Shown: positions 4,838 to 50,283 of the stretch, piece after piece
Numbering within the stretch: the first letter of the stretch is position 1
Layout: each line of letters opens with the position of its first letter
IMG/VR virus record: IMGVR_UViG_3300005613_000001
Coordinates: 463,113-527,112 of that record
DNA length: 64,000 nt
Reading direction: 5' to 3' (one strand)
The notes under the pieces: model-generated
The model's input: the letters and a program-made list of their open reading frames with translations, nothing else
Told to the model about the DNA's origin: nothing
Databases searched by the model: none
Made by a program: the position numbers and the translations under genes

Positions 4838-5857
4838 ATGCCTGTAGATTTTGATACATTTGTTGATTGGGCCGAAAGCCGCTTCGGAGATATAATTGTC
4901 TCATATCCCGAAGTTAAAATCAATTCAATATTTAAAGACAATGACCAAGATCATAAACTCTGGTGTAATCCCGATGGCGGAAAAGACAATATTGAACTAG
5001 GCGTCTACCATTGCTGGAAAACAGGGGAAACAGGCACGCTCGCGGGACTTGTTATGGAAGTGGATGGCTGCGCCTTTGAAGATGCAGTTGATATCCTCGG
5101 CGGTGATACGCCACTCACGGAACTCCAAGGGAAAATAGAAGATTTCTTCGATAACCTACAAACAAAAGAGGCGGCAGAAACCGAAGAGTCTGTTGATCTA
5201 AAGCTACCTCATGACACATATGCTATTGATGAATTGCCGCCCTGGAATCCATATCGCCAAAGAGCAGAAATTTATCTTAGAAATAGAAAAATCCCTACCA
5301 CTAATCTAATGGTCTGCACAGAAGGGATCTACAGGAATAGAATTGTTATCCCGTATTATGACGAAAAAGGGAAATTAATCTATTTCAACTGCCGGGCATT
5401 AAATGATAAACAAATACCCAAATACCGTGGACCTGAGAAAGATTTGGGAATCGGGAAGGGCGATGTTATTTTCATGCCCAAATGGCCCCCTAAAGGCGAG
5501 AAATTATATATTACAGAGGGCGAATTCGATGCTCTATCACTCTTTTATTCAGAGCTTTATTCAGCAGCTATGGGCGGTAAAAATCTCTCCGCAAAGCAAA
5601 TTCAACTACTAAAGGATTATATCCCTGTTATCACGGTTGATAATGACGAGGCGGGCAGATTAGCTTTGCTCACCATAGGAGATTACCTACTAGAACAAGG
5701 ATTTGAAGTTTATTACGTCCGACCACCCCAAGGATTTAAAGATTGGAATGCGTTATTTGAGGAATATGACGCCCAAATTATAAAAGGCTATATCTCTACA
5801 AATGAGAAGCTCTACACCGAAAACACCAGTGTAGAGCTTCTTGAAAAGAGCTTGTGA
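4838..5857 (+). CDS. dnaG: DNA primase (phage TOPRIM type)
   Basis: YHCWKTG zinc-ribbon remnant, YLRNRKI, RIVIPYY, FNCR, PKY, ITEGEFDAL, DND TOPRIM motifs. Confidence 0.9.
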   Translation: MPVDFDTFVDWAESRFGDIIVSYPEVKINSIFKDNDQDHKLWCNPDGGKDNIELGVYHCWKTGETGTLAGLVMEVDGCAFEDAVDILGGDTPLTELQGKIEDFFDNLQTKEAAETEESVDLKLPHDTYAIDELPPWNPYRQRAEIYLRNRKIPTTNLMVCTEGIYRNRIVIPYYDEKGKLIYFNCRALNDKQIPKYRGPEKDLGIGKGDVIFMPKWPPKGEKLYITEGEFDALSLFYSELYSAAMGGKNLSAKQIQLLKDYIPVITVDNDEAGRLALLTIGDYLLEQGFEVYYVRPPQGFKDWNALFEEYDAQIIKGYISTNEKLYTENTSVELLEKSL

Positions 5858-6478: not shown

Positions 6479-7573
6479 ATCATCTAAATCATCAAAATGA
6501 TCGTCGTCGGTGGGTGTAGATATAAGCGTATCAATATCACCGGGTTCAGGTGGTGGTGGTATAAACTTTGAAGGTTCAAAAATCTCTGGACCTTCTTTTT
6601 TCTTTGTAGTCTTTTTCTTCGTAGTCTTTTTCTTCTTCTTTTTAGCAGCCGCCGCCTTATCTTCCGCAGAGCGTAATTTAATTGTCATCGGTTTCTTTTT
6701 CTTTGGCGTTGACGTTGGTTTAGATTTTGATTTGGGTTCTGGTTTGGGTTCTGGAGGTTCTGGTTTGGGTTCTGGAGGTTCTGGTTTGGGTTCTGGAGGT
6801 TCTGGTTTGGGTTCTGGAGGTTCTGGTTTGGGTTCTGGTTTGGGATATTGTATGGCTGGTCGTGGGGGTTTACGATGTTTGGTAATATAAACAAGTATAT
6901 CATCACCTTCAACCCCTGCTTCTTTAGCATCAACTATCCACTTCTCCGCTTCAGAAGGCGTCAATTTCATTTTTATCAAACTATCATATACATCTTTCTC
7001 TGCTCCCTCAAATGATGCTCTGGAAGGCTTTGGAGGCTTCTTTTCTTTTTTCTCTTCTTGTGCTTGTGGAATTTTCCCTGCCCGAGTAATAGCAGCATCT
7101 AAATTCCTTCTAAACAGCCTTTTCATGGTGTCTGCAAATTGATTAAGTGCAGCCCCAATGTTATCATTGCCCAATTCATTTTCTAATTGCAGATAAGCAT
7201 TATGGGTATCTTTATAAACTCCCAGACTTGCATGTTCGAGTCCTAGTTTTTTCTTAATAGCTTGCCACCAGCGAGGAGACTCATATTCCGTGCCCGTCTG
7301 TGGGGATTCCCCCGTAGACCAGTTGCGCATCCGATCTCCTGTCGCTTGCATTTTGTCCCCTGCCCTCCATAACCAGTGAGCCAAACCAGAGCCCTTCCCA
7401 GGTTGATTTTGCATTATTTGGGTGTATAAAGAAGCAACCATTCTATCAATTTGTGCATCAATAGAAGGCAAAAGATCACTCATGATTTGATCTTTTGTTA
7501 CACCGGCTTCCAGTTCGTCAGCCTCAATTAATTTTTGGGGATTTGCAAATATTTCATTAAGTGGGAAGTCCAT
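6470..7573 (-). CDS. Low-complexity Pro/Lys-rich protein, possibly a virion internal protein
   Basis: (PEPKPEP)n, KKKKKKTTKKKTTKKK, acidic C-terminus; no transmembrane segment. Confidence 0.6.
   Translation of the reverse strand: MDFPLNEIFANPQKLIEADELEAGVTKDQIMSDLLPSIDAQIDRMVASLYTQIMQNQPGKGSGLAHWLWRAGDKMQATGDRMRNWSTGESPQTGTEYESPRWWQAIKKKLGLEHASLGVYKDTHNAYLQLENELGNDNIGAALNQFADTMKRLFRRNLDAAITRAGKIPQAQEEKKEKKPPKPSRASFEGAEKDVYDSLIKMKLTPSEAEKWIVDAKEAGVEGDDILVYITKHRKPPRPAIQYPKPEPKPEPPEPKPEPPEPKPEPPEPKPEPPEPKPEPKSKSKPTSTPKKKKPMTIKLRSAEDKAAAAKKKKKKTTKKKTTKKKEGPEIFEPSKFIPPPPEPGDIDTLISTPTDDDHFDDLDDLF
6735..6844. repeat. 21-bp coding tandem repeat (4 perfect units plus partial)
   Basis: GGTTCTGGTTTGGGTTCTGGA at 6735, 6756, 6777, 6798; encodes PEPKPEP on the minus strand. 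Confidence 0.95.
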
Positions 7574-8082
7574 TAGATACCTTCTAATACATAGTCACCT
7601 ATTTTTTTCAAGGACATAAGGCAGGCATCAAATCTATGAAATTCACTTGACAAATATTGTAATCTCAATTCTTGAAACCCATTCATACCTGTATCTGTTA
7701 AATCGAAAAAGAATGATTGTCCTCTTCTTCCTACCACCTTATTTTTCTTTTTCATAAGTATATAGGCTGCGGCACCTAAATCTGATACTTCCCCTATTTC
7801 CCCGACATTTGGCTCATGTTCTCTCATTTTCTTGAGAGACATTAAGCATGAGTCAAATTTATGAAAATCGCTTGAGAGATACTCAAAATTTAGATTATCA
7901 AAGTCATCAAGCTCAGACTCATTCATAAGGAAATATACTGCTTGTCCTTTCTTTCCGCCGATTTCGTGCTTGTTCATTAGACAAAAAGCAGCGGCACCTA
8001 AATCGGTTACATACTTTACAACTCGTTTTTCTTCCACTTTCTTTACCTTTCTTATACTGCATTTTCTGCGGCGATCAAACAT
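7573..8082 (-). CDS. Tandem DUF5659-like domain protein
   Basis: Two internal copies: VTDLGAAAFCLM...YLSSDFHKFDSCLMSLKK and VSDLGAAAYILM...YLSSEFHRFDACLMSLKK. Confidence 0.65.
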   Translation of the reverse strand: MFDRRRKCSIRKVKKVEEKRVVKYVTDLGAAAFCLMNKHEIGGKKGQAVYFLMNESELDDFDNLNFEYLSSDFHKFDSCLMSLKKMREHEPNVGEIGEVSDLGAAAYILMKKKNKVVGRRGQSFFFDLTDTGMNGFQELRLQYLSSEFHRFDACLMSLKKIGDYVLEGI

Positions 8083-9059
8083 CCCCTGCTAACGCTATAA
8101 AGCGGATCAGTAGGACGGATTATCTTACCTATCTTAATTGGCAATTTCGCTTGTTTAATAACATCATTAAACAACGCATCAAACCCATTTGGCAAACTTG
8201 ATCCTCCGGCAATTACAATATCAATTGGATCGTCTGTTCTTGCTTTCTTACCTGCACCTGCCAAACCTTCTTTAATGCCTGTAGCTGTCTTTTCCATCAT
8301 AATTCTATATTGAGTTTGAATGGCTCTTTCTACAAGCGTGCTTGGTTCTTTCGTTAAATCAATATTTCTCTTTTCTTTGTTGATAAAAGTAGCCGTTTCA
8401 CTAACCGCCTTGGCAGCCCTTTTGTCAATCCAGTCACCACTATTAACTAATGAAAAACTAAATACTGGCGCACTGTAAATAGAGAAGCACAGATTTACCA
8501 TTCCCGCCCCAAATGAAATTCCAATGCCTGTATATGCCTTTTTCCCAAGCTCAGCATACACCAATGCTAAGCCCTCGTTAATGGGTTGAGCATTTACTGT
8601 GTGTCCGGTTTCATCTTTAAACGCCTTAAAAATAGCCTCTAAGACTTTACCGTGATAATCTGCATCGGTCTCTTCATTAATGGCATTTGCCGGGACGCTG
8701 TAATATAAGGTTTCTTTGTCCTTAGACACATTATCCAACAGGCTGTGGACCATAATTTTTAAAATCTGAAAGGCATGAATCTCACCCGGATTCACACACC
8801 CTTCTTTCATAGGTCTCTTTAGATTTAACGCACTCATCGTATAAGCCATATCTACGGCTTTCTGTCCCAATGCATAAGCAATATCATCTCGCTCAACAAG
8901 AGGAACGCCTGCATTTTTCATCATATTAAATACAAAACGGTTCTCTAATGGGAATTCAAGGAAGGCATTTACTTCCTTCTTATGAACAAAATTCTTATTT
9001 TCATCTCGCTGACAAGTCACTAAATTATACGTGCCCGCGTCAAAACCGATTCCTGACAT
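8052..9059 (-). CDS. Actin-like (ASKHA) ATPase, volactin/ParM-like
   Basis: Phosphate-1 GFDAGTYN, connect-1 INEGLA, phosphate-2 GISFGAGMVN, adenosine IAGGSSLPNGF, connect-2 PLYSVSRG. Confidence 0.85.
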   Translation of the reverse strand: MSGIGFDAGTYNLVTCQRDENKNFVHKKEVNAFLEFPLENRFVFNMMKNAGVPLVERDDIAYALGQKAVDMAYTMSALNLKRPMKEGCVNPGEIHAFQILKIMVHSLLDNVSKDKETLYYSVPANAINEETDADYHGKVLEAIFKAFKDETGHTVNAQPINEGLALVYAELGKKAYTGIGISFGAGMVNLCFSIYSAPVFSFSLVNSGDWIDKRAAKAVSETATFINKEKRNIDLTKEPSTLVERAIQTQYRIMMEKTATGIKEGLAGAGKKARTDDPIDIVIAGGSSLPNGFDALFNDVIKQAKLPIKIGKIIRPTDPLYSVSRGCLIAAENAV

Positions 9060-9071
9060 TGCTTTACCTTT

Positions 9072-9296
9072 CTATTCCTGTACCTGTTCTCCAAATTTAA
9101 TCTTACCCCCCGCCTCAAAATCGGGGACCATAAAGGGCTCATCTTCTTTTTGAGCTATTTTACCCTTGCCATCAACGGAAACCTTTATGTCATTAGTAGT
9201 TATGTTTAAATTAAGGTCTAATGTGATATTAACATCACATTCACCGTCTTTAGTCACAACGGTAACTTTGGGTTTGCCTTTTAATAACTGTACCAT
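9072..9296 (-). CDS. Small hypothetical protein upstream of the actin-like gene
   Basis: 74-aa ORF in operon orientation; ends in TAG in frame with the actin ATG. Confidence 0.65.
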   Translation of the reverse strand: MVQLLKGKPKVTVVTKDGECDVNITLDLNLNITTNDIKVSVDGKGKIAQKEDEPFMVPDFEAGGKIKFGEQVQE

Positions 9297-9344: not shown

Positions 9345-9506
9345 TTAAAACTCCCAAAAAGGGATGGTTTCGACAGGGATAGGACCATCACCACTACCAC
9401 TAGAACTGGAACTAGAACTGGATGATGTGGGTGGGCGTTGTAGACAATTTTTAATCCAATTAACGAGGCGCTTGAGGGCATCCAATAATTTCTTCAGCCA
9501 TTGCAT
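9345..9506 (-). CDS. 53-aa amphipathic/Ser-rich peptide missing from the ORF track
   Basis: GGAGG SD, then MQWLKKLLDALKRLVNWIKNCLQRPPTSSSSSSSSSGSGDGPIPVETIPFWEF; fills the gap between operon genes. Confidence 0.65.
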   Translation of the reverse strand: MQWLKKLLDALKRLVNWIKNCLQRPPTSSSSSSSSSGSGDGPIPVETIPFWEF

Positions 9507-9507
9507 T

Positions 9508-10503
9508 TTATCCTCCAATGATTTTCAATGGTTGCTTTAACATCTTATCTACTCCTAATAGAATCATGTCTGCTGTAAGTTCTGTCAAACAGGGTTTTGG
9601 ATATGCCTTACTTTTTGGGCAATCGGGCCAATTATAACAAGGTCCACAGTTCCAGTTGCCGTCGTCTCGATGCTTTTGTACAAGTGTCCAATTTTCATAC
9701 CACCTTCCATATACCTTTCCATCGACCATTGTGAAAATACCAACCTGGGGCTTTCCCAAACCCCCGGCCATATGAAAGGTCGCTGTATCGACTGAGACTA
9801 TATAATCCGCTGATGCAACAAAACTCATCCATTTTCTAATAGACCCCATAAGCAAAGGCACTTTTAGATGTTCAAGCATTGGGATTGGACCCGTATGTGT
9901 GTAAAACACATAGCATCCACGCTCCCGTAGTCCGTTTACGACCCCCTCCATTTGATGTGAAATTAAATTTTTAGTCGCCATTGCTGAAATTGGCGAAAAT
10001 AATACTGTTGGTCCACTCTGGGTGCGATGAGACTCAATTTCTCGCTTCGCCTCTATTAATTCTTGTTCACTGAATTGGAAGTGCATATTGTGGTTTTCTA
10101 GTGCAACCCCACAATGGTTAGCCCAAATATCACTTCTATTTTTGCCAGAGAGAGGGGCCATTCTGACTTCATACCGACAGCACGCATTGGTAGTATTATA
10201 AGATGTCAGATAGTCTCCCTGGTCTATTTTTCCAGAATCAACCAGTTCATCTACAAAGGGGTGTCCTTTGATTGCTTGGTGATATATCCCTGGGCAAGCA
10301 AAAACTATCTTAGCATCGGGCATAATCCTTTTAAAATCTTCAAAGATCATTCGGTGAACTAGAATATCCCCTAGTCCCCCATTAGCACGATAAATGAGTA
10401 TAGAATTTCGCTTGTCGCTAAATTCCCTTAAAGACAGATTGGTAGTTCTCTGGCTTTTTTTGACAAGTCTTGATAATAACTTCTTATGCTGAAGTGCTCT
10501 CAT
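9508..10503 (-). CDS. Glycosyltransferase family 9 (heptosyltransferase-like)
   Basis: NGGLGDIL, IVSVDTATFHMAGGLGKPQVGIF, C-terminal CGPC...C...C. Confidence 0.85.
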   Translation of the reverse strand: MRALQHKKLLSRLVKKSQRTTNLSLREFSDKRNSILIYRANGGLGDILVHRMIFEDFKRIMPDAKIVFACPGIYHQAIKGHPFVDELVDSGKIDQGDYLTSYNTTNACCRYEVRMAPLSGKNRSDIWANHCGVALENHNMHFQFSEQELIEAKREIESHRTQSGPTVLFSPISAMATKNLISHQMEGVVNGLRERGCYVFYTHTGPIPMLEHLKVPLLMGSIRKWMSFVASADYIVSVDTATFHMAGGLGKPQVGIFTMVDGKVYGRWYENWTLVQKHRDDGNWNCGPCYNWPDCPKSKAYPKPCLTELTADMILLGVDKMLKQPLKIIGG

Positions 10504-11087
10504 TCAAATAATTTCGCAGGGAATTTAGGAGGCGGCAATTGGTAGAACCGGGGTACTTGTCTTTGGCTGAACGACCCGTGCCCACGCCCTTGACCTTCGC
10601 CTTCGCCTTCTCCTTCACCCTCTCCTTCTACACCAAATGGTTGCCCCCTGCCTTTGCTGGGGTCTGTTGTACCTCTAAAGCTACCGCCTCTTTTTAAATG
10701 TTGTTGGATTGCATGTCCTTGTTCGTGTAACGCTCTGGAATAGGGCAATTCATAAACACGGGGCTCATCTTTTTTAACTTCGAATGGACTATCTTTTTCA
10801 TCAGTGGGGTTTAAATCTTTGGCCCAAACGAGGACACCACCTTCATCATTATCACTGGGTTCATTAATAATAATCCAATATACTTGGAATTTTTCTGGCA
10901 TTTGCTCTGTAGACGGCCAGCCGAACAAGCTATTAATTGCAAACCAAACACCAAAGCCCAAGAATAATGTTGCTGTAATGGTTATCATTTTAATTACCCA
11001 CAGACCTTTAGCTCCAATAACAAACCAAAGGATGAGGGCAGACAACACAATGAAAGCTATAGGAATAGCAGACGTTTCTAAACTCAT
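10500..11087 (-). CDS. Two-TM membrane protein, third gene of the MotA/ExbB-like trio
   Basis: Two N-terminal hydrophobic helices, soluble domain, (GE)n linker; 4-bp overlap with the upstream gene. Confidence 0.7.
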   Translation of the reverse strand: MSLETSAIPIAFIVLSALILWFVIGAKGLWVIKMITITATLFLGFGVWFAINSLFGWPSTEQMPEKFQVYWIIINEPSDNDEGGVLVWAKDLNPTDEKDSPFEVKKDEPRVYELPYSRALHEQGHAIQQHLKRGGSFRGTTDPSKGRGQPFGVEGEGEGEGEGEGQGRGHGSFSQRQVPRFYQLPPPKFPAKLFE

Positions 11088-11734
11088 GGGTCTACCTCCT
11101 CTTCATAATTATTTTCATCAAAACCTCCACCATTAACTGCTTTATCTGCAATGGTCTTGGGCAATTGATTCATACTTACCACGGAGCCCTTTTTGTCTAA
11201 TAAGAACCTGCAAACAGTTTTTTCATCACCATCTTCGTCTAGTGTAACCTTTTTTATAGCCACGGTTTTGAGTGTTGGATTAATTTTATCAATCTGGACG
11301 GTAACCTCAGTAGGTTTATTGGGAGTTCGCTTCGCATACATGTGTACGTTCATTACATACTCACCAGGGATAATACCTCGAATCGTTATAATTTCCCTAT
11401 TTTCGTTATATTTAATTGTCTCACCATCAGGAGTCTTAAAAGTATCATTGCTATGCCCTAAATCGTCACGATCTAAGTGCATTAGTCCATCTTCCCGCCT
11501 CCTAAAGAACACAAGATGGTCAGCGGGGTCTTGCAAATAAGAATCTACATCATTATTTAACTCATTATCCCAAGTGGTTGTAATAACAAACTCAGCTTTG
11601 GCTTCAGAGGCATTATCCAGTTTTGCTTCTGGATTAATTAAAATGTAAGCTATGAAGAATAACGCTACAAATCCCAATAGCGCATTGAATAGCAAATCTA
11701 AGAAGGCTGTATTAGCCCCATAATATTGTCTCAT
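11084..11734 (-). CDS. MotB/ExbD-like single-TM protein with DUF2135/YfaP-like periplasmic domain
   Basis: FLDLLFNALLGFVALFFIA (TM with conserved Asp); W...DVD...P...LDRDD.G...E.I...G.Y...V.MY beta-sandwich pattern. Confidence 0.7.
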   Translation of the reverse strand: MRQYYGANTAFLDLLFNALLGFVALFFIAYILINPEAKLDNASEAKAEFVITTTWDNELNNDVDSYLQDPADHLVFFRRREDGLMHLDRDDLGHSNDTFKTPDGETIKYNENREIITIRGIIPGEYVMNVHMYAKRTPNKPTEVTVQIDKINPTLKTVAIKKVTLDEDGDEKTVCRFLLDKKGSVVSMNQLPKTIADKAVNGGGFDENNYEEEVDP

Positions 11735-12315
11735 TAGATGTCCTTTTTGACTAAATTTAGTCCTTGAGCTAGATTAAAATACTGGATTTTAAGGAGTTGA
11801 GAACAAATTAAACCGATAAGAGTAGTATAGAGGGCTGTAGACATACCTCCACTCATGCTGCTTAACAAATCCTGTACGGACGTGATATCACTTACATCTA
11901 AGGTGCTAAATCCAACGAGCATTAAAATAAAACCACTTACTGTTCCAATCATACCTATATTGACACACATTTCACTTGAAAACCAACCAATTTCTTCCAA
12001 CCTAGATAGCTTCTCAACTTCATCTTCCCACTTTTTTCGTCTTACTTGTTGTCTTTTTCTTTGCTTTGGAGGAAGTGAAGCTTGCGGCCCAGGTCGCGGC
12101 GGCACATCCATATTCAGCACATTACTTAATTTGAATGTTTTCAATCCACACCAAGCTGAGACATATACAAATATCCCAAAAATAACAAAACTAAGTTTGG
12201 TTAAATCTCTTTCCCAAACCTTTTGAAAAGCATCCATATAAAAGGCTGCTACCACTCCCACAAGCACTAAACCGATTACAAGCCACCATTTTAAAAATAA
12301 TTTGTGTTTAATCAT
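11734..12315 (-). CDS. MotA/TolQ/ExbB proton channel family protein
   Basis: IGMIGTVSGF and GGMSTALYTTLIGL signatures; four hydrophobic segments. Confidence 0.88.
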   Translation of the reverse strand: MIKHKLFLKWWLVIGLVLVGVVAAFYMDAFQKVWERDLTKLSFVIFGIFVYVSAWCGLKTFKLSNVLNMDVPPRPGPQASLPPKQRKRQQVRRKKWEDEVEKLSRLEEIGWFSSEMCVNIGMIGTVSGFILMLVGFSTLDVSDITSVQDLLSSMSGGMSTALYTTLIGLICSQLLKIQYFNLAQGLNLVKKDI

Positions 12316-12348: not shown

Positions 12349-12386
12349 AAAAAAAATCTCCTCGGGCCAAAGGACCGAGGAGATTT
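12349..12386 (-). terminator. Intrinsic terminator after the 12410-13021 gene
   Basis: AAATCTCCTCGG...CCGAGGAGATTT 12-bp stem followed by a T-run on the minus strand. Confidence 0.85.
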
Positions 12387-12409: not shown

Positions 12410-13021
12410 TTAGCTGTTGCAGCTTGAACGAATGGACAGAAGAACGGCAACATCGGCGTCAGCGGCACCAGATTCACTGTTTGCAACCTGAATCTTGGAG
12501 ACAGCCAAATCACCATTGTTGAAGATCTGCGTATCGGCAGCAGCCAACGTAAAGGTTGCTGTGGTTAGACCATTCAAGCGAACCTGAACAGAACCAGAAC
12601 CATTGTTGGTAATCTGCGTGAACACAGCGGCGGAACCGTATGTGGTCACAACATCTACCTCGTTGTCCGCAAAAGTAGTACCCGCAGTGGCGGAAATCGT
12701 GGTTGCAGCGGGATATGTATTCTCGCCAGCAACGTCAGAATAAACACTACCATCATCACTTACCACTTCAACAATTGCATCTTCAAGAGAGCACTGTGGG
12801 TAAGCAAATCTCTTCCAATAATTACAATCCGTAAATGTCTCCCCGTCAGACAACTTACGATTAATTAAATTTGGACCCATAACATAAACTTGACGTTGCT
12901 TAGAAGGATCAATCTGATCTCCAAGCCCTTGACCCGTAACGGCACCGGCTGATGCGGTGGAGGGGTCTTTGTCCAAAAGGCCCTGTTCAACGTTGTTCAA
13001 CGCAACTCTAAATACGCTCAT
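12410..13021 (-). CDS. Probable abundant virion structural protein
   Basis: Strong GAGGAG SD, own terminator, Ala/Thr/Gly-rich beta-type composition. Confidence 0.5.
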   Translation of the reverse strand: MSVFRVALNNVEQGLLDKDPSTASAGAVTGQGLGDQIDPSKQRQVYVMGPNLINRKLSDGETFTDCNYWKRFAYPQCSLEDAIVEVVSDDGSVYSDVAGENTYPAATTISATAGTTFADNEVDVVTTYGSAAVFTQITNNGSGSVQVRLNGLTTATFTLAAADTQIFNNGDLAVSKIQVANSESGAADADVAVLLSIRSSCNS

Positions 13022-36872: not shown

Positions 36873-39800
36873 TTAGTAAGGTCTAGTGGATTGGCCGAAT
36901 CTACCCTGTCGTCCTGGGCTCGCTGCGGCAAGTCCAACATTTAGTGCTGGGTACTTAGCGGGGGCAATAGGTTTTGAGGAGCCTGGAGAAGCATCGCCCA
37001 TAGAATTATCTTCATAAGGTATAATCTCGGACCCTTCGCCCATAATGCTAACCATTTCTATTAAGTGAGCATTCATTGCTGTTAAAAGGTCAACATTTTT
37101 CTTTAAATGTGTAACCATTTCACTTAATTCTTCGCCTGCTACCTTTGTAGTGGTAGGTTCGCCGCCAGCTTGTTCTTTCTTGATTTCATCATGAACTTCT
37201 GGCAATGCTGTAGTAGCAACTGGGGCTGCCTCACCCATCAAGGCTGTAGTAGCTGTAGCTGCGGCACCTGTGAAGTCACCGCTTAACAATTTACCACCCG
37301 CCTCTGTAAGTCCTCCCATAACTCCGAGAGGATCATCAATTAATCTACCACCTACAGTTTTTAATGTTTCATAAGATTTAGAAACGAAACCTTTTGCTGT
37401 TTCGCCTAATCCTTTGATTGTATCCATAGGATTCGTAGCAAAATTAATTGCAGCACCTTTTATCTTATCAAATGCACCACCAAGGAAGCCCCCAACCTTC
37501 TTTACAGTCTCTAAAGGATTCATAGCCATATTGGTTATGTTTTTGAAAGACTTACCAATAAAGCCGGTAACGCCATCCAACACGCCTCGGAACGGACCAT
37601 CCCCTTCAGCCTTTATTCCTTTTAGAGCTTCATTAGGTATAACCGCTTCCCCTTCATGCAAAACACCAAGACCAGTTTTTGTGATTTCTCTACTTCCTTC
37701 TTTAAACCAATTAAATGGATTTAAAGCTGAACCAACGGCTTTCACGCCACCCCAAGCTGCTTTTGCTGTTCCCGTAACCGCACCAACACCTGTTTCTAAA
37801 GCCCCACCTGCAATTTTACCTGCACCTTGAAGCAAATCGCCCTTAAGCATGTCACCAACACCACCGGCCATTCCTCCAAGTCCGTGCATTACGCCTGGAC
37901 CCTCTGTTAGCATAGTGTTCATTTGCTCGCCAGCAGTTTCTCCATATCCTTTAGAGGCGTCAGCGGCAGCACCACCAAATAAATTCTTAACCCAAGCAGG
38001 TATTGCATCAATAAGAGCACCAATGGTGTGATCCCAAAGCCAAGTGCCTAAATTAGCAAGACCTTGTGTAACTGAAGTGAATAGCCAAACTGGGAAATCA
38101 AGGAATACACTTTTCATTCCTCCAAGTAATGACTGTCCGAGCCAAATTGGGAAATCAATAAGCGTAGCCTTTAATCCGCTTAGCAAACTACTACCAAGCC
38201 AAATTGGGAAATCAATAAGTGTAGCCTTTAATCCGCTTAGCAAACTACTACCAAGCCAAATTGGGAAATCAACAAACACTGCCTGCAACCCGTTTAAGAA
38301 ATAGCCTCCCAATATCTTAGGAATTTCCCAGAAGACCGCTTTTATGGTGCCTCCAAGCGAAGTGAAAATGCCACCAACTAAGCTAACAAATCCATCCCAA
38401 ATTCTTTTGAATCCTTCTTTGATTTTATCCCAATCAAATGTTAATATTCCTGTTAAAATGTGTACGAATCCAGCAATAGAATTTACTACGCCTCCAATAA
38501 TTTTACCAATACCCATAATGGCTGGTTTGAGCAGGGTAACAATTACTTTAACAACAACCCCAATAGTGTTAATTAGGAATTTTGCTGCCAAACCAAGCCC
38601 TTGTATTCCCACTTGCAATGGTACAAGTGCCGCGCTTGCAACCCAACCGACTACTGTTCCAAGTGGTTTTAATACTGTACCGATTAACCATCCAATTTGC
38701 TTAGCCACCCACCCAATAGCTCCTACAATGCCGCCCAATGCTGTTCCTAACATTCCAAAGAATCCAGAAACACTAGCTAATCCTGATTTAACATCTAACA
38801 ACGGCCCAAAGAACGGTTGGAAAACGGTCATCAAGGTATTCTTGATATCACTGAACACACCTTTGAGCATTGCAAAGGTGGCTTCAAATGGTTCAATGAT
38901 TCCCATTATCACACCTTTAATGCTATTCCACCCATCTAACATAGGTTGGAAAATAGGAGCGAAAATACCCTTAGAAAGACTTTCCAAACCACTACTAATG
39001 GCATTCATTAAATACTTTGGCAAATCAACAAATATTTTGCCAAACATATTCAAGAAGAATTGAGGCACATTACCGACCACAGCTATAAGTGATTTGCCGA
39101 TCATGCCAATAACATTTCCAACCATATTTGGCAGAGCTATGATGGCTCGTCCAAATCCTTCTTTAATTGTTTCAAAATCAAAACTAAACAATCCAACCAC
39201 CGTGCTAAACAAACCACCAAGAACGCCACCTATTCCCCCGGCTATTTCACCAATGAGCTTAAATGGTGTCAAAATAGTCTTTAATATAGCCCCAATCGGA
39301 CCTGTAACCTTGTCCGCCATTCCGCCTATACTGGTAAAGATGCCAGCCACAGCCTGATATAATAACTGCGGGAGCTTTAATATCACTGCTGCAAAATACT
39401 TAGGCAATGCGATAATTTGTTTGCCAATTGCTGGGACGATTGCCACGACACTCTTGTATAGCATTTTTGGAACTGCGAGTAGCATTGTCACCAGCCCATC
39501 ACCCATAGATTTAAAATCAAGAGTAAAGAGCCCCTTAATGACTTGCCATGCTCCACTAAATGTTGCTTTTATGCCCTCGGCTAGATATTTTAATGGTTTA
39601 ATAATTGCATCAATGCCTGGTGCCCATGACATGAGAAATTTTCTTAGAGGCGACCCAGCATCGGTCATTATTTTATATAGTTCAGCTACACCACCACTAA
39701 CAGCACCAGCAATAGCTCCCATGCCTGTGCCAATAACGGGAACAACACTACCAAGAGCAGCACCAGCCATTGCCCCTGTTCCAGCAGCACCCATGATGCC

Positions 39801-42800
39801 CATAGCTTCATCCCCAGCACCGCCTTTTTTAATGCCAAAGAATCTACTAAACATACTGCCTGTGTCTGCGCCTCCGGTTAATGCTCCTAATATGGAAGAT
39901 TCAACAGCACCGGCTATACCTTCGCCCTTAAACACGCCGGTTGCAGCATCTCTTTCAAGGAAGCCACTAAGAGCACCCAACATATGACTAAGACCAGGAA
40001 TCTTTAAAACTTTTCCCGCACCCTTACCTACAGTGCCAGCGGCTTTACTAAGAGCAGAAACAGGGGCTACCTTTAATGCCTTTATGCCTCTATCAAGTGC
40101 TTTAGCCCCATCAGCAATTTTAGCTGCGGCTGGCGTCATCATCTTCGTCACAACAGGCGGAGAGATGCCCTTAGCCACACCCTTAGCAGTGGTTAATGCT
40201 TTTGCAATTTTACCACTTTCTACAACTGGTTTTGCTCCCCCACCCACCAGCATTCCAGCTTTTCTCATCTGTTCAACTTGTGCTGCTTTTTTGGCTCCTT
40301 CTGCTGCCTTTGTGGCTTTTTCAATTGCTGTCGCCATTTTGCCGGGAGCCTCACCAATAGCTTTTATTGCCTGCGCAACATATGGTGGCGTCACTTGTTT
40401 AACAACTTCTGCTGCCTTGAGACCTTTAATCCATTCTTTTGCCATGCCAGCCTTAGCAATTACATTAGATTTAGCTGCCGCTGCAAACTTTCCCGCTCTG
40501 GTTGCGGGTGGCATTTTAGCTGCCGAGAATGGAACCACAGGAGCTTTTGTAATTCCAAGAGCTTGTGATACGTCTTTTACTGTTTTCCCAAATCTACTAC
40601 CAGCGATAGCCTTGGCTCCTCTTTCTGTCAAAGCTACTGCTCTCCCTAGAACTGGAATTCTCTTAGAGAATTCCAGCATTCTCTTCCCATATTTAATTAA
40701 ATTGGTTGCTCGACTTGCAGTGTAGATGGCAGTAAAAGCTTTCCTGCCATAATTTACCATTTTCGCAAAAATACTAGCAGTTTGTTTGCCCCATTTAGCG
40801 GCCTCATCTGTCAGACCTGTCATAAACTTTCCAACATTACCAAATTCTATTTGTTTGGTATATTGAAGGAATCTAAAGGCATGATCTTTAGCGGCTGCCA
40901 TTCCCACTCTTGCATAATCAGTCATCCTTGATATGTCTTTATTTCTAAACACACCAGCAGCTACGTCGCCAAGAGCAGAAAGATGTTGTTTGCCCTTCAT
41001 AGTAACTGATGTCATAGCCTGGTTGAACATTGGAATTTGTTTAGCCGCAACAAAGTTCATCAAGGCTGGGGAGAAAGGCATTCCGCCCTCTGCCGCAGTT
41101 TTATAATCTCTTGCTGGTTCTGCCATTTGTGCAAAATTCATAGCCGCTATTTCAGGGGCAACGCCGACAACACCACCCTCAGCGAAATGAGGAAGCGAAG
41201 AACCATATCGATCTTTTAAGAATTGCAAAACACCAGCCACACCCTTTGCGGTATAGTCAGCAGGAATAATAAGTTCTCCCCCATGAACAACAGCCGGGAC
41301 AGCCCCGGAACCTGGAACTTTACCACCATCTTCCCAAAGCCAACCACGACCAACTAAAGCCGACCCAAATCCAGCTATACCCTCAGCCGCACCACCTATC
41401 ATCTTGCCTGCGCCAACTACTCTACCCACTGTATGTCCATACAAACCACCTTCTTCACTCCCCGTGACTACATCTGCAAGTCCACCACCCCAACGACCAG
41501 CACCTCTAGCCATTCCCCAACTTTCACCTTCCATACCAGCAGCACCAGCTTGGAAGTTTTTAACCATCTCAGAATTAACTATTGCTTCTTTTGTTTCTTT
41601 CCAAGGACGGGTGATAACACTCCAAAGCCAATCACCTATACCAATTAATGCTTCTGTAATTGTAGTCCATAAGAATGAACCAACTTTCTGTATGGCTTTT
41701 GGAAGAGCCCGGAAAGCCCCTCCAATTGTCTCGAAGATCACCCCAGGCAGTCTAAGGAATACCCCTACTAGCATTTCCCAAATAAATTGCCCAGCACCAT
41801 AAAGTGCCGTTCTTAATCCATCTGTGAACATAGTGCCATCAAGCGTGAAAATGCCTTTTAAGATTTTTCCTATGCCACTAAAGAATTTCATAAGTGCCTT
41901 CACTACAGGCAACACAACTTTCAAGACGCCTTTAACCAAACCGGCAAGTGCTCCAACAATCAATCTAATTGGAACTAAAACAACGCGGATAATCCAACCA
42001 ACAACCCATCCAATTTGTTTTAATACCCAACCAATAGCTTTTCCTACCCCCCCGATTACGGAAGCTAGTGTTTCCACGATACCAATAGCATCTTTGGCTT
42101 TCATCCCAAATCCACCAAAGGCTTTTTGGAAATCCTTAAAGATATCGCCCAGCATTTCCCCAAACTCTTGGAAAGGCTTAAATATCTCTTTTATACCATC
42201 CCATAACCCAATGAATACATTTTTAATAAATCTTCCTATACCCTTAAGAATTCCCCAAAGTATCTTTACGGGTATCATTACTGTTTGTAGTGCCCAAGCA
42301 AGAGGCGGGAAAGCATCAAACAGAAGAGCAAGTTTCTGAGTCAGCCACCCGGTAGGTCCAAGAGCCCCTTTGAATAATCCAAATGTAAGGGTATTCAACA
42401 CTCCGGTCATAAATCCAGCACCCTCAGCGGCCCACTTTTGGTTTAAAGTCAATTCGTCTAACGAAGTATTAAATATATCTGTGGCGTGTTCGGCAGCATG
42501 GAATGCATGTACTATTCCACCTATTGCTCCCGCAACTGCCCCAATGGCAAGTAGCCCTGTAGCTGCGCCGCCACCCAACGCTCCACCAACCATGCCAAGT
42601 CCACCCTTCACACCGACACCACCGGCACTCAAAAGATGAAGCCCTTTACCAATGTTTATCAGCCCACCACTCAATTCCCCGAAGATTGATTTAAACGTTC
42701 CTGTCATGACACCCAGGCCAGCAATTGCAATTCCACCAGCCCCTAACAAGGTGAACATATAATTCATAATTTTCCCTGTGTTTGAAGCAACCAATTCATT

Positions 42801-48663: not shown

Positions 48664-50283
48664 ATGAGAACATTTAAAGAATACGTTTCATTAAAAGAGG
48701 CGGCTGGAAAAGAGTCAAGCGGGGAGAATATTGTTGCCAAAAATACCACTATCTTAGGTAAAGATGAAGAAGGCGTTGAACCCTTCATGGTTGGCGCACA
48801 ATATAACCGGAAAAACCTTGGCACACTTGTTAAAGCATTTCTTGCCAGCCCCGAAGTAGAATTTGGTCCCAATATGCTTGATAGCAAAGCCACGACAAAC
48901 CCAGGGCAAAGCACAAGCGGTTTGACCAAAAACAAGCTAAAAAAGAAGACCTTGTATCTCGTTGGAGGGGCAGTAAGAGATCACATGTTGGGCCAAACCC
49001 CCAGTGATTATGACTTGGCTACCGATGCTACAATGGATGAAATCCGCCTCATTTTAAAACATGCTGGATTTGCAGAACTTAGACCACAAACTGCGGTGGA
49101 TAAGAAAAAAGAGGATAAAAAGCCTGATCCAAAATACGACAATCTCCCCGCTGCTTCTGATAATCCGAAAAAGTTCTATGTAAAAGGCACAGACATTAAA
49201 GGCACAGAATTCGTCATGGGAGCTAAAATTCATGGCGAAGAATTTGAAATTGCCACCTTTAGAAAAGATTCCAAAGGGGAAAGCGACGGTAGAACAACTC
49301 GTATGAGCTTCACACCCAAGCTTGAAGAGGACGCTGCAAGGCGTGATTTTACAGTCAATTCAATGTATATCCCACTAACAAGTGAGAATGGCCCAAATAA
49401 TAAATTAATTGATATTTATGGTGGGGTGAGAGACTTAAAACGCAAAAAAGTAAGATTCGTAGGCGATCCAAAAGAAAGATTAGAAGAAGATGAATTGCGG
49501 GCTCTTCGTTATGCTAGATTTGCCTCAATTTTTGAAGATTTGGACATGCCAGATGATATTGTAGATGCCATCGGACAAATGGCTGGACTTAAATCTCTAC
49601 AACCGTTCACTGATAAAGCAGGAAGGCAAAGAGATAGAAGAAAAAGAATTCGTGATGAATTCTTAAAAACAATGAAGAAGGCAAGTGTTAATCCTAAAAA
49701 ATACTTGATGGCGTTAAAAAGACTAGGATTAATACCAGCTATATTCCCTAATTTAAAAATTAGATTAGATGGGCCTGATGATATAAGCGATAAAAGAGAA
49801 AAACATTTAGCTATCGCCTGGTTGCTTAAAGACAATGATCCAGCTAGTGTTTATAGTATACTTACAGATGCACACTGGACTCAAGATGAAGCAAAGCGAA
49901 TTAGTTTTCTAATTAAATTCCTTCACTTCCACCCAGAAATTGATCCTGATAACCTCAACCAAATGTCTTCTGCTTTTATGAAAAGTGGCTTATCAAGTGG
50001 TTACCTCGGCGGAAAAGAAATGGGACAAAAATCACTACTTTCAACTTGGGCTCAAATGAATCCTGATAGATTCCCCGAAGGCTCTGTTGATGCTTTCTTG
50101 AAACACGTTAGCCACGGCCCAATTAAAGTATCCCATGAAGATCCAATGTTCGCTGATTTGTTCGTAGTTGATCCCTTCAGCGGCAAAAGGCGTGGAACAC
50201 CAGGCATTGCACAAAGACAAGCAGAATTGGCACATAAGAGATTTTTAGATATCTTTAAAAGCGGCCAAGCAAAAAATGTATGA
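48664..50283 (+). CDS. cca: Class II CCA-adding tRNA nucleotidyltransferase
   Basis: LYLVGGAVRD...DYDLAT, EIATFR, DAARRDFTVN, D..GG..DL, EDELRALRYARF; no HD domain; no poly(A)-polymerase G(R/K)(R/K)F signature. Confidence 0.9.
   Translation: MRTFKEYVSLKEAAGKESSGENIVAKNTTILGKDEEGVEPFMVGAQYNRKNLGTLVKAFLASPEVEFGPNMLDSKATTNPGQSTSGLTKNKLKKKTLYLVGGAVRDHMLGQTPSDYDLATDATMDEIRLILKHAGFAELRPQTAVDKKKEDKKPDPKYDNLPAASDNPKKFYVKGTDIKGTEFVMGAKIHGEEFEIATFRKDSKGESDGRTTRMSFTPKLEEDAARRDFTVNSMYIPLTSENGPNNKLIDIYGGVRDLKRKKVRFVGDPKERLEEDELRALRYARFASIFEDLDMPDDIVDAIGQMAGLKSLQPFTDKAGRQRDRRKRIRDEFLKTMKKASVNPKKYLMALKRLGLIPAIFPNLKIRLDGPDDISDKREKHLAIAWLLKDNDPASVYSILTDAHWTQDEAKRISFLIKFLHFHPEIDPDNLNQMSSAFMKSGLSSGYLGGKEMGQKSLLSTWAQMNPDRFPEGSVDAFLKHVSHGPIKVSHEDPMFADLFVVDPFSGKRRGTPGIAQRQAELAHKRFLDIFKSGQAKNV

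What the first reader, a model, noticed from the sequence alone, without database searches (positions are those of the whole stretch)
10500..12315. Phage-encoded MotA/ExbB + MotB/ExbD-like ion-motor trio inside the late region
Seen: three coupled genes encoding a four-TM MotA/TolQ/ExbB channel, a single-TM partner with the conserved Asp (FLDLLF) fused to a DUF2135-like domain rather than an OmpA or ExbD domain, and a two-TM protein with a (GE)n linker. Established: 5:2 stator-type complexes power flagella, Ton/Tol, gliding and Zorya defence. Inference: a phage-owned proton-motive-force device, possibly for superinfection exclusion, sabotage of host Ton/Tol/Zorya, or envelope remodelling.
Basis: partly seen in the sequence, partly recalled or inferred. 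Interest (0 to 1): 0.66.

Follow-up and report, generated by a model that had tools for sequence, protein, structure and literature searches.

The report
Phage-borne three-gene stator-like ion motor
A 527-kb phage carries three tightly coupled membrane-protein genes (a miniature MotA/ExbB-type channel, a single-helix partner with the key aspartate and a DUF2135/TerD-like head, and a two-helix accessory protein) that belong to a large family I found no description of, shared by hundreds of phages and about 4% of sampled proteobacteria; it is probably an ion-driven envelope machine, but its job is unknown.

Summary
On the minus strand, 11734-12315 (A), 11084-11734 (B) and 10500-11087 (C) form a translationally coupled trio.

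- **A:** passes Pfam MotA_ExbB and keeps the channel glycines and threonines.
- **B:** has one transmembrane helix with an invariant Asp13, then a beta-sandwich. The sandwich is remotely homologous to E. coli YfaP (DUF2135) and structurally closest to TerD.
- **C:** is a two-helix hairpin plus a small domain. The (GE)n run is a disordered loop inside that domain.

New findings:

- The trio is a fixed module, in the same order in 78/80 viral and 79/80 bacterial loci.
- It occurs in at least 254 IMG/VR contigs, in cultured Rhizobium phages and in Sinorhizobium phage 16-3.
- It also occurs as a chromosomal operon in 17 of 401 sampled Pseudomonadota genomes, so it is not exclusive to phages.
- The window's copy lies in a well-supported clade that is almost entirely viral, so it is not a recent host capture.
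- The "late region" label is not supported.

The function is untested. My best reading is a compact 5:2-type ion-driven motor acting at the inner-membrane/periplasm face, carried by phages as an envelope-related auxiliary module. Sabotage of host Ton/Tol/Zorya looks less likely. I rate it a new variant of a known kind.

The parts
12349..12386 (-). Intrinsic-terminator-like hairpin (12-bp stem) plus a U8 tract, between the upstream gene (12410-13021) and gene A. It marks the trio as the head of its own unit.
   Evidence: Sequence read. RNA fold -21.8 kcal/mol, z-score -3.77, 0 of 200 shuffles as stable.
11734..12315 (-). Gene A, 193 aa: a miniature MotA/TolQ/ExbB-family channel subunit with four TM segments, a short charged cytoplasmic loop, and conserved G121/G124/T125/G128 and A161/L162/T164/T165/G168.
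   Evidence: Pfam PF01618 34.8 bits, above the 22.9 cut-off. Hydropathy. Alignment A4. hhalign against E. coli TolQ TM2-TM3, E 2.3e-5. Only weak ZorA/TolQ/MotP model hits, far below cut-offs.
11084..11734 (-). Gene B, 216 aa: the axle-type partner, made of one TM helix with Asp13, a linker of about 12 residues, and a beta-sandwich head.
   Evidence: Alignment A1, D13 invariant in 64 sequences. AlphaFold2 model pLDDT 89.7. 1740 family representatives at E<=1e-3.
11639..11713 (-). B transmembrane helix (residues 8-32) carrying the invariant Asp13 (codon 11696-11698) in FLDLLF.
   Evidence: A few family members give weak ExbD (3/64) or MotB_plug (2/64) Pfam hits.
11165..11599 (-). B periplasmic beta-sandwich (residues 46-190) with invariant acidic motifs (DDVD, HLDRDDLG, N..E). 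It has a DUF2135/PPC/TerD-like fold.
   Evidence: VIA-align: TerD 2qz7_B Z 9.1 (133 residues aligned) and 2kxt Z 8.6; the next hit is 5.8. Foldseek also finds TerD. PPC Pfam hits in 7/64 members. hhalign against YfaP, E 2.2e-6.
10500..11087 (-). Gene C, 195 aa: a TM hairpin (residues 3-54; 10926-11081) followed by a small alpha/beta domain with conserved GWP and PR.Y.LPYS..LHE motifs. It is an accessory subunit of unknown fold class.
   Evidence: Alignment A3. Model pLDDT 80.7. No Pfam family in 47 members. No PDB match beyond the helical hairpin. All database names are 'hypothetical'.
10593..10628 (-). (GE)n low-complexity run (C residues 154-165), within a poorly modelled loop (pLDDT below 50 at residues 152-156 and 169-174). 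Its length and composition vary between homologues.
10512..10556 (-). Conserved C-terminal motif of C (F..LPPP.(L/F)P.K; K192 invariant). It is modelled as a strand that packs back onto the C domain.
   Evidence: Alignment A3. Strand 180-183 with pLDDT 83-86.
9508..10503 (-). GT9-like (heptosyltransferase-family) glycosyltransferase, joined to C by an ATGA overlap. It is a neighbour in this phage and seven related viral contigs, not a constant member of the module.
   Evidence: Pfam Glyco_transf_9 4.5e-7. Junction read. Distribution.

Best explanation
The three genes encode one compact inner-membrane complex of the MotA/ExbB 5:2 motor kind.

Inferred mechanism, by analogy with TolQR, ExbBD and MotAB:
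- Five copies of A form a ring around the TM helices of a B dimer.
- Protons (or Na+) pass between A's conserved threonines (T125, T164/T165) and B's Asp13, and this drives A to rotate relative to B.
- B differs from the known motors. It has no peptidoglycan-binding domain and only a linker of about 12 residues. Its acidic beta-sandwich head, of a DUF2135/TerD-like fold and probably Ca2+-binding, must stay at the membrane surface.
- C, with its TM hairpin and small periplasmic domain, is the likely third subunit that takes the output. It fills the role TolA or TonB play but is unrelated to them.

The module is an ancient three-gene unit found as an accessory operon in proteobacteria. Phages have kept their own lineage of it, with a shortened A and a lengthened C.

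In this phage it heads its own transcription unit and is translationally coupled to an LPS-type glycosyltransferase. I therefore take it to be an auxiliary envelope module that maintains or remodels the infected cell's envelope at the periplasmic face of the inner membrane.

My odds for the sub-claims:
- A and B form an ion-conducting stator-type pair: about 0.8.
- C is a subunit: about 0.6.
- The role is envelope-directed: about 0.35.
For: Shown:
- A passes Pfam MotA_ExbB. It keeps the G-x-x-G-T and T-T motifs that align with TolQ TM2/TM3.
- B's Asp13 is invariant in 64 diverse homologues.
- B is modelled as one TM helix plus a beta-sandwich at pLDDT 89.7. TerD is the clear top structural match, at Z 9.1 and 8.6 against 5.8 for the next. 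B is remotely homologous to YfaP/DUF2135.
- C is modelled as a TM hairpin plus a small domain.
- Gene order A-B-C is kept in 78/80 viral and 79/80 bacterial loci, with overlapping or abutting reading frames.
- All three are recognisable in Rhizobium phage RHph_I1_18 and in phage 16-3 as p038/p040/p042.
- There is a separate phage clade.
- In bacteria B was found only in Pseudomonadota-type genomes, which are diderms.
- Envelope-related neighbours recur: GT9 here; GDP-mannose dehydratase directly downstream in 23 of 85 viral-type loci (80 IMG/VR contigs, the window and 4 reference loci); L,D-transpeptidase and a vWA-TM-FHA protein in gammaproteobacterial loci; a fasciclin protein and an O-antigen-ligase-like gene in Geminicoccaceae loci.

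Precedent: TolQ-like motors whose Asp-bearing partner carries a non-TolR head (vWA) have been described (PMC12204202, read).
Against: - No experiment exists, and no structure of any member.
- The only complex prediction (A+B+C, one copy each) scored 0.07 and returned 'no answer'. A 5:2 assembly could not be modelled with the tools at hand.
- B's TM helix alone gives no significant sequence match to TolR, so the pairing rests on the Asp, the topology and the gene order.
- C's topology (domain in the periplasm) is inferred from charge distribution only.
- Many phage neighbours are replication or regulatory genes rather than envelope genes. Bacterial neighbours differ between lineages. Context therefore gives only a weak pointer to the role.
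- The short linker of B argues against a Tol/Ton-like reach to the outer membrane, so the output target is unknown.
Confidence: 0.5

Rival explanations
1. Superinfection exclusion or counter-defence. The phage proteins poison or mimic host Ton/Tol/Zorya motors, for example by forming mixed or dead-end complexes, to block entry of other phages or to disarm Zorya.
For: A's best subfamily-level hits are ZorA models (NCBIfam ZorA_4 2.9e-5; PADLOC ZorA 1.5e-5). Small phage membrane proteins often act in exclusion (general knowledge). The phage lineage has a shortened A.
Against: The ZorA scores are about 20 bits against cut-offs of 500-700, and A lacks the long ZorA tail. The same operon is chromosomal in proteobacteria next to transporter, transpeptidase or trehalose genes, not in defence islands. 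The phage copies keep the Asp and Thr residues and always bring their own B and C, which a decoy would not need.
Confidence: 0.15
2. Membrane-potential control or lysis timing. An unplugged mini-channel leaks ions to depolarise the membrane at a set time, or C tethers or regulates a muralytic step.
For: No plug or peptidoglycan-binding domain was detected in B. An ESM Atlas cluster of viral proteins carrying Phage_lysozyme superposes on C at TM 0.58-0.62 over about 148 residues. This is a lead only.
Against: No endolysin, holin or spanin was seen next to the trio in the viral loci clustered. A constitutively leaky channel is hard to square with stable chromosomal operons in free-living bacteria, including streamlined Pelagibacteraceae. 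The lysozyme-fused cluster was not recovered by sequence search.
Confidence: 0.1
3. Cytoskeleton-coupled motor. The stator-like unit works with the neighbouring actin-like (Volactin-family) filament, as AglRQS works with MreB in gliding motility, to move or position something in the infected cell.
For: A Volactin-family gene (Pfam 1.7e-66) lies 1.4 kb downstream in the same unit. A four-gene cassette (GT9, a 74-aa protein, the actin-like gene, a 169-aa protein) stays within 2-4 kb of the trio in seven viral loci despite changes of order and strand. An unrelated bacterial lineage (Geminicoccaceae-type, 4 loci) also has a true Volactin gene (6e-74) 1.5-4 kb from its trio.
Against: Only 7 of 80 viral loci (plus the window itself) and one bacterial lineage show the link. 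In 401 sampled Pseudomonadota genomes, the 14 with Volactin and the 17 with B do not overlap at all. Phage A proteins have almost no cytoplasmic domain to touch a filament.
Confidence: 0.07
4. A passenger gene set recently picked up from a host, with no phage-specific role.
For: Cellular homologues exist. The Pelagibacteraceae-type cellular copies share the short-A/long-C architecture and branch next to the viral clades.
Against: The window's B is at most about 53% identical to any cellular copy found and 58-60% to the nearest viral ones. At least 254 viral contigs carry it. Reading frames and order are intact in 78/80, across genomes from 60 kb to 527 kb. The viral label needs only 4 changes on the tree, against 55 for shuffled labels.
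Confidence: 0.05

Closest known systems
TolQ-TolR-TolA and ExbB-ExbD-TonB (Tol-Pal and Ton motors)
   Same: A three-gene inner-membrane set: a MotA/ExbB-family channel subunit, a single-TM partner with an essential Asp in the helix, and a third membrane-anchored protein. The conserved Thr residues of the last two TM helices align with TolQ. Found in diderm proteobacteria.
   Different: A has four TM segments and is only 165-193 aa in phages. B's head is a DUF2135/TerD-like beta-sandwich on a linker of about 12 residues, not the TolR/ExbD fold. C has a TM hairpin, no conserved His or SHLS-type motif and no periplasm-spanning domain. NCBIfam TolQ model: 15 bits against a cut-off of 221.
MotA-MotB / PomAB flagellar stators
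   Same: Four-TM topology of the A subunit with a loop between TM2 and TM3. Asp in the B helix. Adjacent, coupled genes.
   Different: No torque-generating cytoplasmic domain (in most phage copies the loop is reduced to a short linker; the window's A retains about 55 residues, including a roughly 25-residue charged insertion). No plug and no OmpA-like peptidoglycan-binding domain. No flagellar genes nearby.
ZorA-ZorB (Zorya anti-phage defence)
   Same: A non-flagellar MotAB-like pair. ZorA models give A's best subfamily hits.
   Different: Scores are far below cut-offs. A lacks the long coiled-coil tail of ZorA. No ZorC/D-type genes are nearby. The module is carried by phages themselves and by bacteria outside defence contexts.
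TolQ-like motors paired with Asp-bearing 'transpore helix'-vWA proteins (Mol Biol Evol 2025, PMC12204202)
   Same: The same design principle: a TolQ-like ring whose dimeric partner keeps the Asp helix but carries a different periplasmic head. The function is likewise unknown.
   Different: The head here is DUF2135/TerD-like, not vWA. There is a constant third subunit C, and the family has a large phage branch. In gammaproteobacterial loci a vWA-TM-FHA protein lies downstream of C but is a separate gene.
YfaP (DUF2135) of E. coli, and TerD tellurite-resistance proteins
   Same: The beta-sandwich of B aligns to the DUF2135 part of YfaP and superposes best on the Ca2+-binding TerD fold. It shares the W..D.D / G.Y.V..Y pattern also seen in PPC domains.
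   Different: YfaP and TerD are not fused to an Asp-bearing TM helix and are not paired with a MotA/ExbB gene. The Pfam DUF2135 and TerD models do not hit B.

Membership tests
MotA/TolQ/ExbB proton channel family (Pfam PF01618), protein A | Score above the family's curated cut-off | tested here: met
   34.8 bits against a cut-off of 22.9, E 1.6e-8. Confirmed on the whole genome record.
MotA/TolQ/ExbB proton channel family, protein A | Conserved Gly/Thr motifs in the last two TM helices that line the ion path | tested here: met
   G121, G124, G128, A161, L162, T165 and G168 are invariant; T125 and T164 are >=90% conserved in 35 sequences. They align with TolQ residues 132-208. That these TolQ threonines are functional is from the literature, not tested here.
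5:2 stator-type complexes (MotAB, TolQR, ExbBD) | Adjacent gene for a single-TM partner with a conserved Asp in the helix | tested here: met
   Asp13 is invariant in 64 homologues. The helix is modelled at residues 8-32. The A and B reading frames abut.
5:2 stator-type complexes | Pentamer of A around a dimer of B | not testable with these tools
A 1:1:1 run gave 'no answer' at score 0.07, which is neither support nor evidence against.
ExbD/TolR family (Pfam PF02472), protein B | Match to the family model and a TolR/ExbD periplasmic fold | tested here: not met
   No hit for the window's B at E<=0.1. Only 3/64 relatives hit weakly, best 1e-3. hhalign against E. coli TolR is not significant. The fold is a beta-sandwich.
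MotB/OmpA-like stator anchors, protein B | OmpA-like peptidoglycan-binding domain and plug helix | tested here: not met
   No OmpA hit. MotB_plug hits weakly in only 2/64 relatives. The model shows a linker of about 12 residues leading straight into a beta-sandwich.
DUF2135 (Pfam PF09906), head of B | Match to the Pfam model | tested here: not met
   No hit at E<=0.1 by hmmscan and none at E<=1 in the whole genome record.
DUF2135, head of B | Homology to a bona fide member (E. coli YfaP) | tested here: inconclusive
   hhalign of the B-family profile against YfaP: probability 89%, E 2.2e-6, 84 columns over YfaP 139-226. An Atlas cluster named YfaP/DUF2135 superposes at TM 0.79/0.88. This amounts to remote homology, not family membership.
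TerD family, head of B | TerD fold | tested here: met
   2qz7_B Z 9.1 (133 residues aligned, rmsd 3.9) and 2kxt Z 8.6 (144 aligned), with the next hit at 5.8. Foldseek gives E about 1e-3. This is fold similarity only, at 10-13% identity and with no TerD Pfam hit.
Zorya ZorA, protein A | Score above the ZorA model cut-off, a long C-terminal tail, and ZorC/D partners | tested here: not met
   23.2 bits against 500 and 12.8 against 700. A ends 16 residues after its last TM. No such neighbours.
TolA/TonB-type force transducers, protein C | Single N-terminal TM helix with a conserved His (SHLS-type motif) and an extended periplasm-spanning region | tested here: not met
   C has two TM helices. Its conserved positions are L20, K33, G56, W57, P64, R110, Y116, H121 and K192, with no conserved His in the TM part. 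Its domain is small, and its only long linker is a variable loop.

The most novel reading that the evidence does not exclude
The trio defines an undescribed class of minimal 5:2 ion-driven machines. It combines a mini-MotA ring, an Asp helix fused to a Ca2+-binding-type DUF2135/TerD head, and a dedicated hairpin subunit. It works entirely at the inner-membrane surface rather than reaching across the periplasm. Phages of many sizes have maintained it for a long time as their own tool to reprogramme the host envelope. In some lineages it may work together with an actin-like filament cassette.
Probability: 0.35. Interest if true: 0.75.

Novelty: new variant of a known kind. Interest (0 to 1): 0.6.

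Why it matters
Ion-driven 5:2 motors are known to power flagella, Ton uptake, Tol-Pal, gliding, type 9 secretion and Zorya defence. Each new partner domain has so far revealed a new use of the same engine.

Here the engine comes with an unfamiliar axle head and an unfamiliar third subunit. It is stripped to near-minimal size and is carried by hundreds of phages, from a 60-kb temperate Sinorhizobium phage to a 527-kb megaphage. A cellular counterpart is found in about 4% of sampled proteobacteria, including Pelagibacteraceae.

This makes one question directly testable: why would a virus need its own proton-motive-force transducer? The question can be asked in existing culture systems (phage 16-3, and Rhizobium phages of the P10VF and RHph groups). 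The small size also makes the module an attractive target for structural work on how such motors couple to their loads.

Tried and rejected
- **Nucleotide search of 8 kb against cultured phages:** no match.
- **tblastn of A against cultured phages:** no match, although A-like genes are there and were found by profile.
- **First genome scan with the 64-row alignment:** It was repeated with 15 rows.
- **Complex prediction with A, B and C (one copy each, own alignments, C as partner):** score 0.07, 'no answer'. This is neither support nor evidence against. A 5:2 assembly exceeds the tool's chain and residue limits.
- **Fold of C:** the PDB-wide search matched only the generic helical hairpin. BFVD found only the Rhizobium-phage orthologues. 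The soluble domain was not searched on its own, so I do not claim a new fold.
- **Lysozyme-fused Atlas cluster resembling C:** not recovered by the profile word search. That search sees only proteins 0.55-1.75 times the query length and lists the best 120. It stays a lead.
- **General link between the trio and the Volactin-type actin:** rejected as a rule. There is no overlap between the 14 Volactin-positive and 17 B-positive genomes among 401.
- **'Late region':** rejected.
- **vWA partner in this phage:** the only VWA_2 hit in the 527-kb record lies about 145 kb away from the trio.
- **Sequencing runs:** one marine metagenome holds 6% of the sampled words. This is too little to name a habitat with confidence.
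- **Literature:** seven full-text searches found no description of this trio or of phage-encoded MotA/ExbB modules. The library lacks most subscription journals.

Only genetic code 11 was used.


Full report
**Setting.** The window is the last 64 kb (463113-527112) of a 527,112-bp IMG/VR virus record that CheckV rates complete. Baseplate and tail genes (Tail_P2_I, Phage_base_V, PKD-domain proteins and a 2654-aa protein) fill 15-47 kb on the minus strand, so this is a very large tailed phage. No tRNA lies in the window.

**The three genes.** On the minus strand lie A (11734-12315, 193 aa), B (11084-11734, 216 aa) and C (10500-11087, 195 aa).
- A's stop and B's start share a base.
- B/C and C/next-gene overlap by ATGA.
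- Thirty-odd bases upstream of A sits a 12-bp hairpin followed by eight U. It folds at -21.8 kcal/mol, z -3.8.
- The trio therefore opens its own unit. That unit continues without large gaps through a GT9-like glycosyltransferase, two small ORFs, a Volactin-family actin, a 169-aa internally duplicated protein and a 367-aa protein, down to 6470.

**Protein A.**
- It passes Pfam MotA_ExbB (34.8 bits, cut-off 22.9).
- It has three clear hydrophobic segments and a fourth, more polar one.
- In an alignment of 35 orthologues the motifs around G121-G124-T125-G128 and A161-L162-T164-T165-G168 are (nearly) invariant. They align with TM2-TM3 of E. coli TolQ (hhalign E 2.3e-5).
- Subfamily models (TolQ, MotP, ZorA) reach only 13-23 bits against cut-offs of 221-700. 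A is therefore a family member but belongs to none of the named subfamilies.

**Protein B.**
- No Pfam, NCBIfam or PADLOC family matches it. One partial PHROG of unknown function does.
- The family is nevertheless large: 1740 representatives at 50% clustering with E<=1e-3, nearly all about 200 aa.
- Asp13 in the single TM helix is invariant, as are W55, D62, D64, D90, D91, G93, E114, G124 and N129.
- AlphaFold2 gives a confident model (pLDDT 89.7): helix 8-32, a short linker, then a beta-sandwich at 49-189.
- The PDB-wide structural search puts two TerD proteins clearly on top (Z 9.1 and 8.6, 133-144 residues aligned; the next hit is 5.8). Foldseek agrees.
- Some relatives give weak PPC, ExbD or MotB_plug hits.
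The Pfam model itself does not hit. The family profile aligns to the DUF2135 part of E. coli YfaP (probability 89%, E 2.2e-6). An Atlas cluster named after YfaP superposes at TM 0.79/0.88.

**Protein C.**
- It has no family in any library, and every database name is 'hypothetical'.
- Conserved features are the TM hairpin, a GWP motif just after it, a PR.Y.LPYS..LHE block, and a C-terminal F..LPPP.(L/F)P.K motif with an invariant Lys.
- The model (pLDDT 80.7) shows the hairpin and a small alpha/beta domain. The C-terminal motif returns to that domain as a strand. The (GE)n run lies in a disordered loop whose length and composition vary between homologues.
- The (GE)n run is therefore not a periplasm-spanning tether of the TolA/TonB type.

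**The module elsewhere.** Fetching loci through B alone gave the following.
- At least 254 IMG/VR contigs matched.
- Twenty-nine cultured phage records matched, all Rhizobium or Sinorhizobium phages.
- A, B and C homologues sit together in the same order and tightly spaced in 71 of 80 loci of each set. All three are present in 78/80 viral and 79/80 bacterial loci, and the two viral exceptions are cut by contig ends.
- In Rhizobium phage RHph_I1_18 the gene before B passes MotA_ExbB (26.8 bits against the 22.9 cut-off), and the gene after it resembles C.
- In the temperate phage 16-3, p038, p040 and p042 are A-, B- and C-like.

**Cellular copies.**
- They lie on long chromosomal contigs of Alpha-, Beta- and Gammaproteobacteria, including the isolates Sphaerotilus mobilis, Ideonella paludis, Methylohalomonas lacus, Azohydromonas lata and Pseudaquabacterium pictum.
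- In an even sample of 401 genomes of the phylum, 17 carry B at E<=1e-10.
- Their neighbours differ by lineage:
  - an ABC transporter with a binding protein and a beta-propeller in Sphaerotilaceae and Pelagibacteraceae;
  - an L,D-transpeptidase, DUF302 and a vWA-TM-FHA protein in Gammaproteobacteria;
  - a fasciclin protein, trehalose genes and an O-antigen-ligase-like gene in Geminicoccaceae.

**Phage lineage.** A maximum-likelihood tree of 165 B proteins (quick search, SH-aLRT support, midpoint root) separates the sequences as follows.
- Two bacterial clades: 61 Alpha-, Beta- and Gammaproteobacteria rows (SH-aLRT 93), and a further 10 Alphaproteobacteria rows, mostly Geminicoccaceae-type (97).
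- A group of 93 rows: 84 viral plus 9 labelled bacterial.
- The viral label needs 4 changes on the tree, against 55 for shuffled labels.
- The window's B lies in a clade with support 95 that holds 71 viral rows and 2 short MAG contigs of non-proteobacterial bins, whose neighbours are uninformative.
- Seven Pelagibacteraceae-type rows form their own clade beside the viral ones. They have genuinely bacterial neighbours.
- They share with phages the short A (165-193 aa against about 245-260) and the long C (about 190-210 against about 165-172).

Caveats: both sets are the 80 best matches to the window, and the root is not inferred. The direction of transfer between phages and Pelagibacterales therefore stays open. 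What is clear is that the window's copy is not a recent capture. Its nearest relatives are viral (58-60% identity), and no cellular copy found exceeds about 53%.

**Context in phages.** Besides the trio no neighbour is constant.
- The commonest is a GDP-mannose 4,6-dehydratase directly downstream, in 23 of 85 viral-type loci (the 80 IMG/VR contigs plus the window and four reference loci).
- Others are an ERCC4 nuclease, a sigma-70-type factor, a DnaG-like primase (also in the window at 4838-5857), a PD-(D/E)XK nuclease, ClpP and GlpX.
- This is not a late structural context.

**How it probably works.** The family membership of A, the Asp helix of B and the fixed coupling make a stator-type ion-conducting pair the natural reading.
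- The features that differ from known motors are informative. B has no peptidoglycan anchor and a very short linker. C is small and hairpin-anchored. In most phage copies A has lost almost all of its cytoplasmic loop and its C-terminal extension; the window's A keeps about 55 residues between TM2 and TM3, including a roughly 25-residue charged insertion.
- The whole machine should therefore sit at the membrane and its periplasmic face, rather than bridging to the outer membrane.
- The invariant acidic clusters on a TerD/PPC-like sandwich suggest Ca2+ binding. This is an inference from the fold relatives.
- Recurrent glycan and cell-wall neighbours give a weak pointer to the envelope.
- A published precedent exists for TolQ-like rings whose Asp-bearing partner carries a different head (vWA), also of unknown function (PMC12204202).
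- I found no paper on this trio or on phage-encoded MotA/ExbB modules in seven searches.

**Rivals.**
- *Sabotage of host motors or Zorya* is disfavoured by the cellular operons and by the conserved functional residues.
- *A depolarising or lysis-timing role* has only a structural lead (a lysozyme-fused viral cluster resembling C), and no lysis genes lie nearby.
- *A link to the neighbouring actin-like gene* is striking locally. The cassette stays near the trio in seven viral loci despite rearrangement, and a true Volactin gene lies near the trio in Geminicoccaceae. It is not general, because there is no overlap of carriers among 401 genomes.
- *A functionless passenger* is excluded by the breadth and integrity of the phage clade.

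**Limits.**
- No 5:2 model could be built, and the 1:1:1 complex run returned no verdict.
- A itself was not folded, because both fold jobs went to B and C.
- C's topology is inferred, and the role in infection is untested.
- Read laying was not used. The one run found holds only 6% of the sampled words and is a marine metagenome.

Noticed in passing
window 8052-9059 (-), with 9072-9296 (-), 7573-8082 (-) and 9508-10503 (-): A Volactin-family actin homologue (Pfam 1.7e-66) sits in a four-gene cassette: a GT9-like transferase, a 74-aa protein, the actin-like gene, and a 169-aa protein made of two internal repeats. Seven viral contigs share the cassette at 67-71% actin identity, always within 2-4 kb of the trio but in different order and strand.
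   Followed up: partly
L037:238-1239, L046:2833-3843, L054:485-1495, L066:2641-3645: A true Volactin-family gene (Pfam 6e-74 in L066) lies 1.5-4 kb upstream of the bacterial trio in four related Geminicoccaceae-type Alphaproteobacteria. A fasciclin-domain protein lies divergently next to the trio. Genome-wide, Volactin and B carriers do not co-occur (0 overlap of 14 and 17 among 401 genomes). The repeated adjacency is unexplained.
   Followed up: partly
L006:8669-9448 (also L007): In a 179-kb marine viral-type contig a radical SAM/SPASM gene and two small ORFs are inserted between B and C, so C lies 1 kb downstream. The module tolerates insertions between its genes, as also seen in phage 16-3 (p039, p041).
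   Followed up: no
L027:7119-8639, L043:7110-8621 and about 20 gammaproteobacterial loci: A 500-aa protein with an N-terminal vWA domain, a membrane segment and a C-terminal FHA domain directly follows C. An L,D-transpeptidase (YkuD) and a DUF302 protein precede A. Rhizobium phage RHph_I1_18 also has a vWA protein 2.3 kb downstream of its trio.
   Followed up: partly
window 36873-44837 (-): A single 2654-aa ORF lies between baseplate-type genes and a 437-aa ORF. By position it is presumably a giant tape-measure or tail protein. It was not analysed.
   Followed up: no
window 48664-50283 (+): A 539-aa protein with a PolyA_pol head domain (3.2e-28), that is, a CCA-adding or poly(A) polymerase-type nucleotidyltransferase, encoded by the phage.
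   Followed up: no
window 9345-9505 (-): A small ORF right after the GT9-like gene, with a good ribosome-binding site. It encodes a 53-aa peptide with an amphipathic N-terminus and a serine-rich stretch with a run of nine Ser. No ORF of this exact extent was listed by the ORF finder, which reports a 57-aa TTG-start version.
   Followed up: no
window 4838-5857 (+): A DnaG-like primase (Toprim_2 7e-14, DNAG_N) on the opposite strand near the unit that the trio heads. Homologues occur near the trio in 16 viral-type loci, which shows that the trio's usual setting is the replication/accessory part of these genomes.
   Followed up: partly
G003 (genome of L043): C1:732417-732989 and C1:2535531-2536118: One gammaproteobacterial genome carries two B copies of similar score at distant places, so the module can be duplicated within a cell.
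   Followed up: no
PDB 11pb_C (virion structural protein, 864 aa), residues 273-314: The B-family profile weakly matches (E 0.089) a DDVD-containing stretch of a solved phage virion protein. PHROG 1735 (673 positions, unknown function) matches B residues 46-195. The same sandwich type may occur in phage structural proteins.
   Followed up: no
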